Shown here: positions 14,850-19,793 of the stretch, piece after piece
Layout: the number at the start of each line of letters is the position of its first letter
Position numbering within the stretch: the stretch's first letter is position 1
Position numbers and translations under genes: made by a program
Assembly (NCBI GenBank): GCA_965637545.1
Contig: OZ281495.1
Location: 24,490,001-24,554,000 of the forward strand
DNA: 64,000 nucleotides
Source: Phallusia mammillata
Lineage: Eukaryota
Reading direction: 5' to 3'
Notes under the pieces: model-generated
Databases searched by the model: none
The model's input: only the letters and a program-made list of their open reading frames with translations
Told to the model about the DNA's origin: nothing

Positions 14850-15324
14850 CTTAAAGAAAAAGCAACAAGTAGGGTTTTTAAAGAAGTCCATTTGCAACAC
14901 TTATTAAGACTAATACTTTGTAACGGTATATGATTACTAAAACAAGATTTAATGACAATGCAAAACAATGTACTCTCCAACATGCGAATTTGTAACGTTC
15001 CATGTTTCAAGTCAAGTTATAACTCAGAAGCCGTGTTTATCTGGAAAATTGGAACAATAAACAAATTGTTAAGTCAACGACACTGTTCGCTTTATTGTTG
15101 TTGTCAGTTATAACTGGGTTTTGTGATCTACATTACAAACCCTTGTATTACGTAACATGTAAACAGTATTGCTGGTCACAACTTCCCAATTTTAAAATCC
15201 CCGGCTTATCGCACCCATGTGTCAAATGCTAGCTACGGATATACAACTTTCATCACACACAAGACAGTTGGCAATCGCCTCTATCCGGTTATGCTTAGTT
15301 GTAAGTGGCTTGTAAGACTGGATT

Positions 15325-17683
15325 ATGGTATTGGAAATAATTGAGTGTGTGTTAAAAGTCTCCAAAAAGATTTACGAAACCGTGGATAACGTACAAGCCA
15401 ACAAGAAACGATGCCACAGATTATCTGACAGAATCCGTTGCCTGGTTACGCCGCTCAACGAGTTAGTAAAGCAGGTGATAGAACATTAAAATTGGCGTAT
15501 AGTGTTTTGTATGCATCAGGTTTAGCCAATCGTGGGATTCAAATTCAGCTGGTTCTATCACAAAAGTCATATTTTTTAGCCAGTTCTGTTACAAAAGTCA
15601 TTGACAGTAACCAGTAACGCTAACCGGTTCGTTGATCTCATAAAATTTCGTGAGACGGTTCTATAGAACTGGCGCAAACCGGCTGAATGCCACCACTGGG
15701 TTTAGCATTTTTTAAGTGTGCTTTAATGCGAAGGTTCGCACACTTCTTTAATAACTTCAAAATTATATTTTATTAGCAGATGTAAAACAAAATTCGTAGA
15801 TGCAATCAAACTTGGGTAACAATAATGAGTGTCAAATTGGTTTGTTTTTGTAGGGTGATAACAGTGCAGTTTACAAAGAGGCGTTGATCGACCTTGTACG
15901 AACGTTGGAAGAAGCTCGACAGTTTTTGAAAACTTTTACCAAAGGAAAGTCGGTCTTACGCCGTTTGCAGGATGCCTACCATGCCAGCAGAGAAAAGGTT
16001 TTTGTGTTCAACAATTTTACTATTTCAACCACTCCACAGCAACGAGGGTGTGGTTTAAAAACACTTGTTGTGACAGCAACAAGTTTGTCCTAAGCCCTTG
16101 CAGTTTTAAACAATGTTAATTCTGTTTGAACAATTTTGTACATAGTTTAATCGAAGAATTATAAGAACGCTTTGAACCATGTAATGTAGTGGAAATTAAA
16201 AACTTGTGTGGTGGTTTCAACAAATAGCCTTTTGAAAATACCCTATTCCACGGAAATCTTTAGTAAAAGGCGAAAGATTTGCTCATGTTGAAGTTGCGAT
16301 TGTAGGAAACATTTGAAAGCTTGAACGAACGTCTCAACAACTTGGTTCCAACGCTAACGTTTGGTTTGCAAGTGGAATGTCGCAAGTCGGTGCAAAAAAC
16401 TTTCTCAGTCACCACGAGGGTAACCGAGGACACTAAAGACGAATCGAGCGACCTTAAAGAAATACAGCAAATGGTCAATGCGCTCGGTAAAAATCAACCA
16501 TGTTGAATTATCATTCAGTGTCTTGAGTTGTTTTTTAATTCTAGGTCTCCCTTCGTTTCATTGCATTCGATTTGCCGATTTAAAGGAAAAGAAACTTCAC
16601 AGCGAATCTGACTTGTACATACACTATTCGGCGAAATACAGGTTCAACCAAGTTGTATTGAAAAAGCCGAAATACGCCCTGACTTCAGCACGGTTCGTTA
16701 CAATGATGTATTTTTTACACACAATGGTTTCTTTATTATCATTCATAAACAGAAAAGAGCAGTTTTTGACCGATGCAAGGAATATGCTTCAGTTTAATTC
16801 GGAAAGTGTTGTACGGGTTTATGGGCTCTGCGTGGACGTGCGCGATACGTTTATGATTATTTTGGAACACATGAAATTCGGAAGTCTTAATGAGGTTTGC
16901 TTTGACTTTTGGATAATCCAACATAAAAGCTTTAAGCTTATCCTTACCTTCAGCTTCTGGCATCAGAACAGCCAGAACTAAATCGTACAACGCTGATTCG
17001 TATGATGATTGAGACTGCACGTGGTCTCTACTTTGTCCATTGCTGCGACGTGGTGCATGGCAGTTTGTCGTTAAGCAACTATTTGGTTAACGAAGACCTT
17101 CACGTCAAGGTAAACCGCAAGTATGACATCACCACTATGACGCAACGTATGAAGGAGCTTTTAAAAATGCAACTTTTAATGTTACCTTGCAGATATCTGG
17201 ATTCGAATTTTCTAGATCCGAGCGTGATATTGCGCAATCTGAGTCATCAAACTGCAGTTTGCCATCTGAATGCTGTGAAGGAACTCGAATAGTTTGTCCG
17301 AAAACCGACGTTTATTGGTAAAAGCTTTACTGCGTTTTGCGTTTTGTAATATGATTTTCGGCAAACCTTTTATCAAACTCTTTTGCAGTTACGGACTCGT
17401 GTTGCTGGCACTTTTGACTCGTTTGTCCGGGAAACACCAGCACATCGATCCCTCCGAATGCCAACACTTAATGGCCAACCTGGTTGTGGATAAACAGCCG
17501 TTAGACGTCGCTAAATCTTGTTTGGCAAATGATTCGATGATGCGTCCTTCAATGGAAGGTATATAGGCACGAATATTACCTATGTAACGATGTAAATAAA
17601 TACTTTGCATATACACGTGTTTTATTTCAGAGGTGGTCGTCGACTTAACATCGTACTTTGAGAAGGCCACAGATTCAATGTAA
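15325..17683 (+). CDS. MLKL: Mixed lineage kinase domain-like pseudokinase (four-helix bundle plus pseudokinase), 422 aa
   Basis: Nine frame-consistent exons: 15325-15474, 15854-15997, 16306-16486, 16545-16692, 16753-16894, 16954-17109, 17193-17317, 17389-17558, 17631-17683 (1269 nt). N-terminus MVLEIIECVLKVSKKIYETVDNVQANKKRCHRLSDRIRCLVTPLNELVKQ..LEEARQFLKTF..FESLNERLNNLVPTLTFGLQV follows the MLKL NTD pattern. The kinase-like domain has VLKK, HGS in place of HRD, GFE in place of DFG, and no Gly-rich loop. Confidence 0.88.
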
Positions 17684-19793
17684 TGACACTTGTGTTTCTT
17701 CAACAATCTTAAGTTTTGTGCCGTTTTCTGCTCGGTTTGACCTGTGCCTATTGTAACAGTTTGGTCTTGTCTATTGTTCACTGTGTCATACGCTAATCAG
17801 CAAGATTACGTATTTCCTTTTTTGTATGAAGTCCTTCATAAAACAGTCAATCCCCCATGAGCTCGTTGCTTCACTTTTGCATTATCTCCGACTCCTTTGC
17901 TCCATATAGTCACAATAGTATGGTACATTGCTTTTTAAACACTGTTGAAATATTTTGGTGTCAAAGTCGTCTTTTTCTATATTCACCACATGTTTAAATT
18001 AGGATTACCTAAATTTAAATGTACATTCTCGATGTTTGAACTTTTCTGTGAGTTTTATGCTAAAAACATTTGTCAACATTTCTGCACAGTGTGCATACTA
18101 TTTAACTCTGATAATGAGAACATGCACATTTTTCCGTTGGTTCAACTAAGGACAGTATGAAAGTCATGGTCTGCATTGCGTTGTGTTTACTGTAGAAAAA
18201 GTGCAATTACTTTTGCCATGAAACTGGAATAAACGAGTTGTGATTATGATACTGTGATATAAAGCGCAACTATTAATCTATGTGCATTTTTAAGTCAATA
18301 CATTGGGCATGACAGAGATAAACGTATGTCGCAATAGGTATTCCTCACCTTGTGCTATAGGCGTTTGATTAAAAAATGTCTATAGGTTGTGTTTTACTCG
18401 GTCTTCCTTCCGTCGCTGTAACAGCGACCCGAGCAATCGGCAGAGCAGACTCGTTTTTACCGCTCCTAACCCTGGCTGCTAACGCCAGGTTACACAGAAA
18501 TTAGGAGGGAGACTCATAATCCATGATGTGGTTGTCTATAATGGTTTTGCTACAGGAAAAATCCGGACGACTGCTCGGTGGCATCGCGCCTGTAGAAACT
18601 GAATCAATCACAAAACGTTTCCGGAAATATACCACGGAGCGGCTTGAAAGGCAGTTTGTCATATCTCTAGCCTCTACCAATAATATACAACAATGAATAA
18701 CATATTGGATTGTGAGCTTCCAACACGCCTGAATATTTAATTGGAATAGCAACATTTTTAACATTATTTGCACACAGCAAGTGACCCTTGTGTCATATAT
18801 TGGCGCTGAAACGTTGATTAGCCTACCTAGTCGATTTGATGGTAATTACCGGCGGAGTTTTACGTTTCTATAGTAAAGCTATTAATCGGTAGAACGCTTG
18901 GTCTATTTGTTTGATAACATTGTGAATGGCACAAACTGTGGTGTGTTGATAGCGCGTTGTAGCTGTTTTAAACGCATGCCAAGTTTTCGTAAAATAACTT
19001 GTATGCTTTCAAGGCAAAACGAAAACTAACTTATAACAGAGGTTAGATGTGAATATATTGGACGACTCAGTTTTTTGAAGAAGCAACAGGCATGAACAAC
19101 CAGATACATATTGCAGTGTTACCAAATTGCTGTGACGCGGCCGAACGGTGTGATTCCGGAGAAAATTGGCTACATGATATGGAATCGTCATTTCCGACAA
19201 AACGCGAATTTATGCACATAGGCAGTCCCAGCCTTTTTTGATTAGGTTACATGAAGCAGATAAAATGAAGAGAGGACTGATCATAATTGGCACTTAATGG
19301 CAAACTGTTGGACGTGTCGACTCGGGTAAATATCCTTTGTGGATCCAGAAGATGTTCAACACCTGAAGAATGGCTCAAGCAAGTTCAAGCAAGATAATAT
19401 GCCACAGCATAATCGTTTGTGCAACACAGACCTTGCTATTCTCATTTGCTAGGTCTGTCTTCACAATACGACTTTGTTGGTGACCCTTTCATCAATGTAC
19501 TGATGAAAACCCTATACTCGTCGGATCGATCGCATTTTCAAGAAACTTAAGTTTATTGGCGTCTTTTGATCGTATAACTGGCATCTTTAATTTGGAGTTT
19601 GTATGTAGTTTTATGCGCTTAATTGCTCTTATCGTATCGTTGCATTGAATTTGATTGACACAATAAACGAACAGTTAAGAACATCTGCTGGATTTTTTTT
19701 AAATGAGGGAAGTCAAACACAATTGAGTGTTACAAACAAACCATTGTTTGTTGCCGAAAACTAGCTGCATTTATTGAAAACGATAGGCATGTC

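What the first reader, a model, noticed from the sequence alone, without database searches (positions are those of the whole stretch)
15325..17683. Intact MLKL-like necroptosis effector in an apparently invertebrate chordate genome
Seen: a complete 9-exon, 422-aa ORF that joins an MLKL-type four-helix bundle to a pseudokinase with HGS for HRD and GFE for DFG. The ORF track shows only fragments, and the 4HB exons are easy to miss. Established: human MLKL has HGK and GFE at these positions and executes necroptosis downstream of RIPK3, which is generally described as vertebrate-restricted. Inference: this may be a membrane-permeabilising cell-death effector working in a pre-RIPK3 pathway.
Basis: partly seen in the sequence, partly recalled or inferred. 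Interest (0 to 1): 0.8.

Follow-up and report, generated by a model that had tools for sequence, protein, structure and literature searches.

The report
Ordinary sea-squirt MLKL orthologue
This is a real, intact sea-squirt gene for MLKL, the membrane-breaking cell-death protein. MLKL genes in sea squirts, which lack the vertebrate activator RIPK3, have already been described and partly tested, so this is a sound annotation and not a discovery.

Summary
Nine GT-AG exons on the + strand (15325-17683) splice into a 422-aa ORF. Exons 1-3 match Pfam MLKL_N in order. Exons 4-9 form a kinase fold that lacks both catalytic aspartates (HGS for HRD, GFE for DFG).

The protein is 47-66% identical over its length to MLKLs of other ascidians (Ciona intestinalis, C. 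savignyi, Clavelina, Styela). It shares their nine-exon structure and, with Clavelina, the gene order PISD-MLKL-FANCD2. It is single-copy. A profile of the ascidian proteins hits only MLKL at the top of the PDB.

No RHIM motif reaches the Pfam cut-off in the genome, which fits published reports that tunicates lack RIPK1 and RIPK3. Twelve transcriptome-sized runs hold about the exonic share of the gene but were not listed as holders of intron 1.

The biology is already published. MLKL without RIPK3 in Urochordata is known, and the C. intestinalis N-terminal domain kills human cells (PMC11476962).

One small addition: a DxxD motif in the brace (DTKD, 140-143) is present in all five ascidian sequences. 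It aligns exactly with the human caspase site 137-DQQD-140, which suggests caspase release of the killer domain. This is untested.

The scan had already noted this same stretch (s1-358917).

The parts
15325..15474 (+). Exon 1 (aa 1-50): start codon, helix 1 and part of helix 2 of the four-helix bundle
   Evidence: Pfam MLKL_N 39.3 bits, positions 2-44. 75-76% identical to C. intestinalis MLKL. The top six PDB hits of this exon alone are all MLKL.
15854..15997 (+). Exon 2 (aa 51-98): middle helices of the bundle
   Evidence: MLKL_N positions 51-86, 14 bits. 77% identical to C. intestinalis. Clavelina and Styela have the same exon boundaries at 50/51 and 98/99.
16306..16486 (+). Exon 3 (aa 99-158 plus one base): last bundle helix and the two brace helices
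   Evidence: MLKL_N positions 92-140, 30.9 bits. 68% identical to C. intestinalis.
16429..16440 (+). DTKD (aa 140-143), a DxxD motif in the first brace helix and a candidate caspase site
   Evidence: D-x-x-D is present in all five ascidian sequences. It aligns column for column with human EDQQD and mouse EDRQD. Human 137-DQQD-140 and teleost 133-DAVD-136 are published caspase sites (PMC11932488, PMC13602534).
16545..16692 (+). Exon 4 (aa 159-207): start of the pseudokinase N-lobe, with no glycine-rich loop and the beta3 Lys198 at 16661-16663
   Evidence: Translation. 50% identical to C. intestinalis. Matched by P0009 in the genome search.
16753..16894 (+). Exon 5 (aa 208-255): helix C to beta5 of the N-lobe
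   Evidence: PK_Tyr_Ser-Thr 29.5 bits, positions 46-89. 57% identical to C. intestinalis.
16954..17109 (+). Exon 6 (aa 256-307): helix E and the catalytic loop, with HGS (17056-17064) in place of HRD
   Evidence: PK_Tyr_Ser-Thr 25.5 bits, positions 92-142. Motif read from the sequence.
17193..17317 (+). Exon 7 (aa 308-348): GFE (17199-17207) in place of DFG, and a divergent activation loop
   Evidence: Translation. The alignment with ascidian MLKLs shows GFE or GFG at this column.
17389..17558 (+). Exon 8 (aa 349-405): C-lobe helices F to H
   Evidence: Aligns with the ascidian MLKL C-lobes at 33% identity. The D-x-Y-x-Y/F-G and RP-x-ME motifs are kept.
17631..17683 (+). Exon 9 (aa 406-422 and TAA stop)
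   Evidence: Splice model. Clavelina and Styela also have a short ninth coding exon.

Best explanation
The locus is the single-copy MLKL orthologue of an ascidian. Earlier scan notes name the species as Phallusia mammillata, which I did not check. I put the probability of this identity at about 0.97. By homology, the protein is a latent executioner. Its N-terminal four-helix bundle (aa 1 to about 125) can insert into and permeabilise membranes. The two-helix brace and a catalytically dead kinase domain (HGS and GFE, no glycine loop) hold the bundle in check until a signal releases it. I put the probability of this mode of action at about 0.7. The canonical trigger, RIPK3 docked through RHIM signalling, is absent from this genome and from tunicates in general, so activation must be RIPK3-independent. 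The most concrete candidate is caspase cleavage after Asp143 of the conserved brace motif DTKD, which would free aa 1-143. I put that at about 0.25. Shown here: gene structure, domain identity, pseudokinase motifs, orthology, synteny, single copy, and no RHIM hit. Inferred: membrane killing, auto-inhibition and the trigger.
For: The splice model gives 422 aa. MLKL_N matches exons 1-3 in order, two of them above the Pfam cut-off on their own, and this is the only such locus in 240 Mb. The model is 56-57% identical to C. intestinalis MLKL, 55.5% to Clavelina, 47-48% to Styela and 66% to the C. savignyi fragment. All of those carry MLKL_N plus a kinase domain at 80-85 and 95-121 bits. They share the nine-exon structure, and Clavelina shares the PISD-MLKL-FancD2 order (window Pfam). 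The full-length ascidian profile's eleven best PDB hits are MLKL (116-166 bits), followed by EGFR at 93 and RIPK1 at 85. The N-terminal profile, which includes the window's exons 1-3, hits only MLKL (81-90 bits, E 1e-24 to 9e-22). An AlphaFold model of the C. intestinalis N-terminal domain, which is 73-76% identical to ours, has as its nine best PDB matches MLKL executioner domains, with query TM-scores of 0.64-0.71. No RHIM reaches the cut-off. Runs X1-X8 and X11-X14, from three studies, hold 0.33-0.40 of the gene's words but were not listed as holders of intron 1, which appeared only in the DNA-like runs X9 and X10. Published work: the C. intestinalis MLKL N-terminal domain kills HEK293T cells (PMC11476962), RIPK3 is absent from Urochordata (PMC11932488, citing Dondelinger 2016), and no RIPK1 homologue was found in tunicates (PMC12119088).
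Against: No experiment exists for this species. In PMC11476962 the Styela clava N-terminal domain is not among those listed as giving robust death, so killing is not uniform in ascidians. Splice junctions were not read directly. The structure was predicted for the Ciona orthologue, not for the window's own protein. The six-frame RHIM search uses a 22-position model and has limited power. The DxxD motif also occurs at the same column in an MLKL_N protein labelled as bacterial (P0018), so it may be structural and not a cleavage site.
Confidence: 0.85

Rival explanations
1. Sub-hypothesis on the trigger: an executioner-type caspase cuts after Asp143 (DTKD) in the brace and frees the four-helix bundle. 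This would make caspase-driven MLKL killing the ancestral, RIPK3-independent route in tunicates and vertebrates.
For: DxxD is present in 5 of 5 ascidian sequences. It aligns exactly with human EDQQD and mouse EDRQD. Cleavage at human 137-DQQD-140 and teleost 133-DAVD-136 activates MLKL (PMC11932488, PMC13602534). The genome has many caspase genes and gave no Pfam gasdermin match, as in the sea cucumber, where caspase-1 cleaves MLKL (PMC11932488).
Against: The brace is conserved overall (73% identity), so conservation of the motif is weakly informative. The motif also occurs in P0018, labelled as from a bacterial MAG. The sea-cucumber cleavage site (LVAD17) is elsewhere in the protein. No cleavage data exist for any tunicate.
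Confidence: 0.25
2. Sub-hypothesis on the trigger: a kinase other than RIPK3 phosphorylates the activation loop, or a bound partner shifts the pseudokinase and releases the bundle, as phosphorylation does in mouse MLKL.
For: The pseudokinase fold, beta3 Lys198 and Asn297 are retained. The activation loop is rich in Ser and Glu. The orthologues keep the whole domain.
Against: The activation loop and C-lobe are the least conserved parts (35-40% identity). Counting without gaps, position +7 after GFE, which holds human S358, is Asp here, Phe in C. intestinalis and Ser in Clavelina. The Styela loop carries an insertion, so the position cannot be placed there. No conserved phospho-acceptor is therefore evident. 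Sea-cucumber MLKL is not regulated by phosphorylation (PMC11932488).
Confidence: 0.25
3. The protein has a mainly non-lethal role, such as endosomal or vesicle membrane remodelling, and is not a dedicated death effector.
For: The four-helix bundle is unusually conserved among ascidian orders (60-78% identity against 33-42% for the C-lobe). That suits a conserved housekeeping partner better than an arms race. The gene is single-copy. From general knowledge, vertebrate MLKL also has trafficking roles.
Against: The C. intestinalis N-terminal domain kills cells (PMC11476962). Nothing here bears on trafficking.
Confidence: 0.12
4. It is an unexpressed relic or a mis-modelled gene.
Against: The ORF is intact across eight canonical introns. 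The exon structure matches two annotated orthologues. Transcriptome-sized runs hold exon-sized shares of the gene without intron 1.
Confidence: 0.03
5. It is an active TKL or tyrosine kinase with a coiled-coil head, or it is vertebrate contamination.
For: Single exons of the kinase part hit generic kinases.
Against: Neither the HRD Asp nor the DFG Asp is present. MLKL_N is matched. The best relatives are ascidian MLKLs at 47-66% identity, whereas the C. intestinalis orthologue's model shares only about 19-27% identity with mammalian MLKL chains. Synteny with Clavelina is conserved.
Confidence: 0.02

Closest known systems
Ciona intestinalis MLKL (UniProt F7ACH1, P0009) and the other ascidian MLKLs: Clavelina lepadiformis P0010, Styela clava XP_039261240 (P0004) and the C. 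savignyi fragment H2YIU6 (P0001)
   Same: The length is the same or nearly so (422, 424 and 431 aa). All have MLKL_N plus a pseudokinase, nine coding exons and GFE or GFG in place of DFG. None has a catalytic Asp (HRN, HKN, HGN, and HGS here). The brace DxxD is conserved. The PISD-MLKL-FancD2 gene order is shared with Clavelina.
   Different: Overall identity is 47-66%. The catalytic-loop triplet HGS is unique among the ascidian sequences I found. The activation loop is divergent, with Asp at +7 after GFE. This species' protein is not in the protein collections searched.
Vertebrate MLKL (mouse 4BTF; human 2MSV, 4MWI)
   Same: The architecture is a four-helix bundle, a brace and a pseudokinase. 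Human MLKL has HGK and GFE and mouse has HRN and GFE. The EDxxD brace motif sits at the same column. MLKL chains are the best PDB matches by sequence profile, and for the N-terminal domain by fold as well.
   Different: Identity of the ascidian orthologue to mammalian MLKL is only about 20-25%. No RIPK3, RIPK1 or RHIM partner is available in tunicates. There is no conserved equivalent of the T357/S358 phospho-acceptors.
Sea-cucumber AjMLKL (PMC11932488)
   Same: It is an invertebrate deuterostome MLKL that acts without RIPK3 phosphorylation, in a genome without gasdermin. Its killer function lies in the four-helix bundle.
   Different: AjMLKL is cut by caspase-1 at LVAD17 in helix 1. Here the corresponding stretch reads ETVD21, which is not an LxxD motif and is not conserved in Styela. 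The candidate site here is in the brace.
Plant MLKLs and fungal HeLo/HELL domain proteins
   Same: They have a helical-bundle membrane-disrupting head joined to a regulatory domain. AtMLKL2 (6LBA) appears as a weak fold match.
   Different: They are much more distant. They are activated by NLR or amyloid signalling and are not orthologous.

Membership tests
MLKL (mixed lineage kinase domain-like) | N-terminal four-helix-bundle executioner domain (Pfam MLKL_N, PF22215) | tested here: met
   Exons 1, 2 and 3 match positions 2-44, 51-86 and 92-140 at 39.3, 14 and 30.9 bits, against a cut-off of 27. The N-terminal profile that includes the window's exons hits only MLKL in the PDB.
MLKL (mixed lineage kinase domain-like) | The N-terminal domain folds as the MLKL four-helix bundle plus two brace helices | tested here: inconclusive
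   This was tested only by proxy. A model of the C. intestinalis N-terminal domain (73-76% identical; MSA includes the window's exons) has pLDDT 76 and pTM 0.71. Its nine best PDB matches are all MLKL executioner domains, with query TM-scores of 0.64-0.71. The window's own spliced protein has no reference and could not be folded.
MLKL (mixed lineage kinase domain-like) | C-terminal protein-kinase fold | tested here: met
   PK_Tyr_Ser-Thr matches exons 5 and 6 above the cut-off. Full-length alignment to orthologues that score 95-121 bits.
MLKL (mixed lineage kinase domain-like) | Pseudokinase: the catalytic Asp of HRD and the metal-binding Asp of DFG are replaced | tested here: met
   HGS at aa 290-292 and GFE at aa 310-312. 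There is no GxGxxG loop. Read directly from the sequence.
MLKL (mixed lineage kinase domain-like) | Closer to MLKL than to active TKL or tyrosine kinases | tested here: met
   The ascidian profile's top eleven PDB hits are MLKL at 116-166 bits, against 93 for EGFR and 85 for RIPK1. I could not build a tree of my own with vertebrate sequences. The published tree places Urochordata MLKL in the deuterostome MLKL clade (PMC11476962).
MLKL (mixed lineage kinase domain-like) | Orthology with annotated MLKL genes (gene structure, synteny, copy number) | tested here: met
   Nine coding exons with boundaries at the same positions in Clavelina and Styela. PISD-MLKL-FancD2 order shared with Clavelina. 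Only one N-terminal-domain locus in the genome.
MLKL (mixed lineage kinase domain-like) | The released N-terminal domain permeabilises membranes and kills cells | not testable with these tools
   Published for the C. intestinalis N-terminal domain in HEK293T cells (PMC11476962). Not tested for this species.
Canonical RIPK1/RIPK3-MLKL necroptosis pathway | An upstream RHIM-bearing RIPK3 (and RIPK1) kinase in the same genome | tested here: not met
   The Pfam RHIM search of the whole genome gives a best hit of 16.5 bits against a cut-off of 20, E 2.9. The literature reports no RIPK1 homologue in tunicates (PMC12119088) and RIPK3 only in Craniata (PMC11932488). The gene is therefore an MLKL, but the pathway is not canonical necroptosis.
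Canonical RIPK1/RIPK3-MLKL necroptosis pathway | Conserved activation-loop phospho-acceptors equivalent to human T357/S358 | tested here: not met
   Counting without gaps, positions +6 and +7 after GFE are Arg and Asp here, Ser and Phe in C. intestinalis, and Ser and Ser in Clavelina. The Styela loop carries an insertion and cannot be placed.

The most novel reading that the evidence does not exclude
The brace DxxD motif (DTKD 140-143) is conserved in every ascidian MLKL found and is in register with the human and teleost caspase-activation site. On this reading it marks an ancestral caspase-to-MLKL lytic pathway that predates RIPK3. In gasdermin-poor, RIPK3-less tunicates, this would be the main route to lytic cell death.
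Probability: 0.2. Interest if true: 0.5.

Novelty: new member of a known kind. Interest (0 to 1): 0.2.

Why it matters
[quoted passage not shown] It also confirms that the gene sits in a genome with no detectable RHIM signalling. That MLKL predates RIPK3 is already in the literature, so the finding does not change the picture. The open question is how MLKL is switched on without RIPK3. The conserved brace DxxD gives one cheap, testable answer: caspase cleavage. The unusually high conservation of the killer domain among ascidians is a second small lead.

Tried and rejected
The tool says this filter also trips by chance. The substitute was a comparison of two run searches, which shows exon-sized shares without intron 1 but no exact junctions.

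2. The window's own spliced 422-aa protein has no reference, and typing long sequences is barred. It was therefore never sent whole to Pfam, the PDB, structure prediction or the protein searches. Exon pieces and orthologues were used instead.

3. Single-exon PDB searches are underpowered. Exon 1 gives MLKL as its top six hits but only at E 0.013. Exon 3 gives nothing. Exon 6 gives generic kinases.

4. A phylogeny of my own with vertebrate, amphioxus and echinoderm MLKLs was not possible. The word-based searches returned only ascidian MLKLs plus distant kinases. The exhaustive search with the 116-aa N-lobe piece found 8 proteins.

5. The helix-1 motif ETVD21 was considered as a counterpart of the sea-cucumber site LVAD17. 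I rejected it as weak: P4 is not Leu and Styela has TVEE.

6. The position is confirmed by ungapped counting, but it is not conserved in any other ascidian, so I give it little weight.

7. The full-length proxy model (pLDDT 69) puts mouse MLKL 4BTF first, but RIPK1 kinase domains follow closely. The fold of the kinase part alone does not discriminate.

Full report
**Observation.** The region was read and spliced by script. Nine exons on the + strand all have AG/GT borders: 15325-15474, 15854-15997, 16306-16486, 16545-16692, 16753-16894, 16954-17109, 17193-17317, 17389-17558 and 17631-17683. They join into 1269 nt, encoding 422 aa plus a TAA stop. The introns are 379, 308, 58, 60, 59, 83, 71 and 72 nt long. 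An in-frame TAA lies four codons upstream of the ATG. Exons have a GC content of 0.44 and introns 0.34. The beta3 lysine (VVLK198) and the catalytic-loop Asn297 are kept. There is no glycine-rich loop.

**Domain identity from the window itself.** A six-frame scan of the whole 240-Mb assembly with Pfam MLKL_N (PF22215) found only this locus above the cut-off. Taken exon by exon, exon 1 scores 39.3 bits (profile positions 2-44), exon 2 scores 14 bits (51-86) and exon 3 scores 30.9 bits (92-140). The three matches are collinear and sum to roughly 84 bits, which equals the 80-85 bits of full ascidian orthologues. Exons 5 and 6 pass the PK_Tyr_Ser-Thr cut-off.

**Relatives.** The spliced protein has no reference, so I searched the exhaustive protein library with the stop-free 116-aa stretch that spans exon 4, the in-frame intron 4 and exon 5. 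The search found eight proteins. Names came:
- Ciona intestinalis MLKL, F7ACH1 (P0009, 422 aa)
- a Clavelina lepadiformis protein (P0010, 424 aa)
- a C. savignyi fragment (P0001, 253 aa)

The model is 56-57%, 55.5%, 47-48% and 66% identical to C. intestinalis, Clavelina, Styela and C. savignyi respectively. There is no closer hit, so this species' protein is not in the collections searched.

The window's exon pieces tile the orthologue alignment end to end. The Clavelina and Styela genes have nine coding exons with boundaries at the same protein positions: 50/51, 98/99, then about 159, 208, 256, 307, 350 and 410. In Clavelina the neighbours are a PISD gene on the minus strand with a nested plus-strand gene, then MLKL, then FancD2. 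The window has the same order, with FancD2 Pfam hits at 20.8-28.7 kb and the PISD and nested gene from note s1-358965. Styela has different neighbours. A genome search with the Ciona protein found no second locus for the N-terminal domain. This is a single-copy orthologue in an ascidian. Earlier scan notes call the genome Phallusia mammillata. I did not verify the species.

**Is the ascidian family really MLKL?** Three tests say yes.
- A profile of the four ascidian proteins has MLKL as its eleven best PDB hits (mouse 4BTF at 165.6 bits with both domains matched, others at 116-159). There is then a gap to EGFR at 93 bits and RIPK1 at 85 bits.
- A profile of the N-terminal domain alone, which includes the window's exons 1-3 as rows, hits only MLKL chains (81-90 bits, E 1e-24 to 9e-22). 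The next hit is noise at E 0.007.
- An AlphaFold model of the C. intestinalis N-terminal domain served as a proxy. It is 73-76% identical to ours, with pLDDT 76 and pTM 0.71. Its nine best Foldseek matches are MLKL executioner domains, with query TM-scores of 0.64-0.71. Other helical bundles fall to about 0.2-0.5.

The full-length proxy model (pLDDT 69) puts 4BTF first, but RIPK1 kinase domains follow closely. None of them is met.

**Expression.** The indirect evidence is as follows. Twelve small, transcriptome-sized runs from three studies hold 0.33-0.40 of the sampled words of 15200-17800. A spliced mRNA would be expected to hold about 0.4-0.5. Intron 1 on its own was listed as held by the two DNA-like 2024 runs (0.61 and 0.29), with shares of 0.10 or less in seven other runs, and not by any of those twelve. 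The tool warns that a run not listed may still hold the stretch. The pattern is consistent with a spliced transcript but does not prove the junctions.

**Pathway context.** Pfam RHIM finds nothing above its cut-off in the genome. The best hit is 16.5 bits against a cut-off of 20, with E 2.9. This agrees with reports that RIPK1 homologues are not found in tunicates (PMC12119088) and that RIPK3 appears only in Craniata and not in Urochordata (PMC11932488, citing Dondelinger 2016; also PMC11507063). Caspase genes are numerous. No Pfam Gasdermin match was found. That search works exon by exon in six frames, so absence is not proven.

**Comparison with what is known.** The central claim is already published. 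Wang et al. 2024 (PMC11476962) catalogued MLKL in Echinodermata, Hemichordata, Cephalochordata and Urochordata, including C. intestinalis and S. clava. They placed these proteins in one invertebrate deuterostome clade and showed that the C. intestinalis N-terminal domain causes robust lytic death of HEK293T cells. Chen et al. 2025 (PMC11932488) showed RIPK3-independent activation of sea-cucumber MLKL by caspase-1 cleavage. No paper in the library links MLKL to Phallusia. I therefore file the gene as a new member of a known kind.

**What may be worth keeping.**
- Domain conservation among ascidians is uneven. The four-helix bundle and brace are 57-74% identical (the bundle core reaches 78%), the N-lobe 40-60% and the C-lobe 33-42%. 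The killer head is the most constrained part.
- The brace carries DTKD at aa 140-143 (window 16429-16440). D-x-x-D is present in all five ascidian sequences. It aligns column for column with human EDQQD and mouse EDRQD. Human 137-DQQD-140 and teleost 133-DAVD-136 are reported caspase sites whose cleavage activates MLKL (PMC11932488, PMC13602534). The latter paper surveyed vertebrates only. Caspase release of aa 1-143 is therefore a concrete, testable trigger for a RIPK3-less animal.
- There is one caution. The same motif occurs in an MLKL_N protein labelled as from a bacterial MAG (P0018), so it may be structural.
- The Asp at +7 after GFE, the position of human S358 noted in s1-358956, is real by ungapped counting. 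It is not conserved in other ascidians.

**Verdict.** It is a single-copy ascidian MLKL orthologue whose existence, RIPK3-less context and likely killing activity are already documented for close relatives. Interest is 0.2.

Noticed in passing
window about 1-29000, and L011:1-22962: The gene order PISD (minus strand, with a nested plus-strand gene in its intron), then MLKL, then FANCD2 is the same in this window and in Clavelina lepadiformis. Styela clava MLKL has different neighbours (Staufen-like, a WD40 protein, an ankyrin protein).
   Followed up: partly
window 16693-16752: Intron 4 is 60 nt long, in frame and free of stop codons. Retaining it would insert 20 hydrophobic residues into the pseudokinase N-lobe without breaking the ORF. 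Prokaryote-style gene calls on other ascidian assemblies (P0005, P0006) read through the equivalent border.
   Followed up: no
G000:C2:24624282-24625309 (about 70 kb beyond the window end): A Peptidase_C14 (caspase) gene with a long open frame lies about 117 kb downstream of MLKL on the same strand. A functional link is pure speculation.
   Followed up: no
G000:C2:2.66-3.85 Mb, also C3:8.8-9.2 Mb, C4:0.5-2.3 Mb and C6:9.85-9.87 Mb: The Ciona MLKL kinase half gives weak hits (25-35% identity) to dozens of apparently intronless kinase-domain ORFs of about 300-340 aa, arranged in clusters. Three of them have identical scores and lie about 115-128 kb apart. This looks like a lineage-specific expansion of single-exon kinase or pseudokinase genes.
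   Followed up: no
whole genome G000: The six-frame scan found no Pfam Gasdermin (PF04598) match, while caspases are numerous. If this is real, the genome resembles the sea cucumber in having MLKL but no gasdermin.
   Followed up: partly
P0018 (612 aa, NCBI, labelled Thiotrichales bacterium MAG): This protein has MLKL_N plus a kinase domain (HRN, DFG kept), is attributed to a bacterial metagenome bin, and has a DKKD motif at the brace column. It is either contamination from a eukaryote or a bacterial MLKL-like protein.
   Followed up: no
window 15325-16486 compared with 16954-17683: Among ascidian orders the four-helix bundle is far more conserved (60-78% identity) than the pseudokinase C-lobe (33-42%).
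   Followed up: partly
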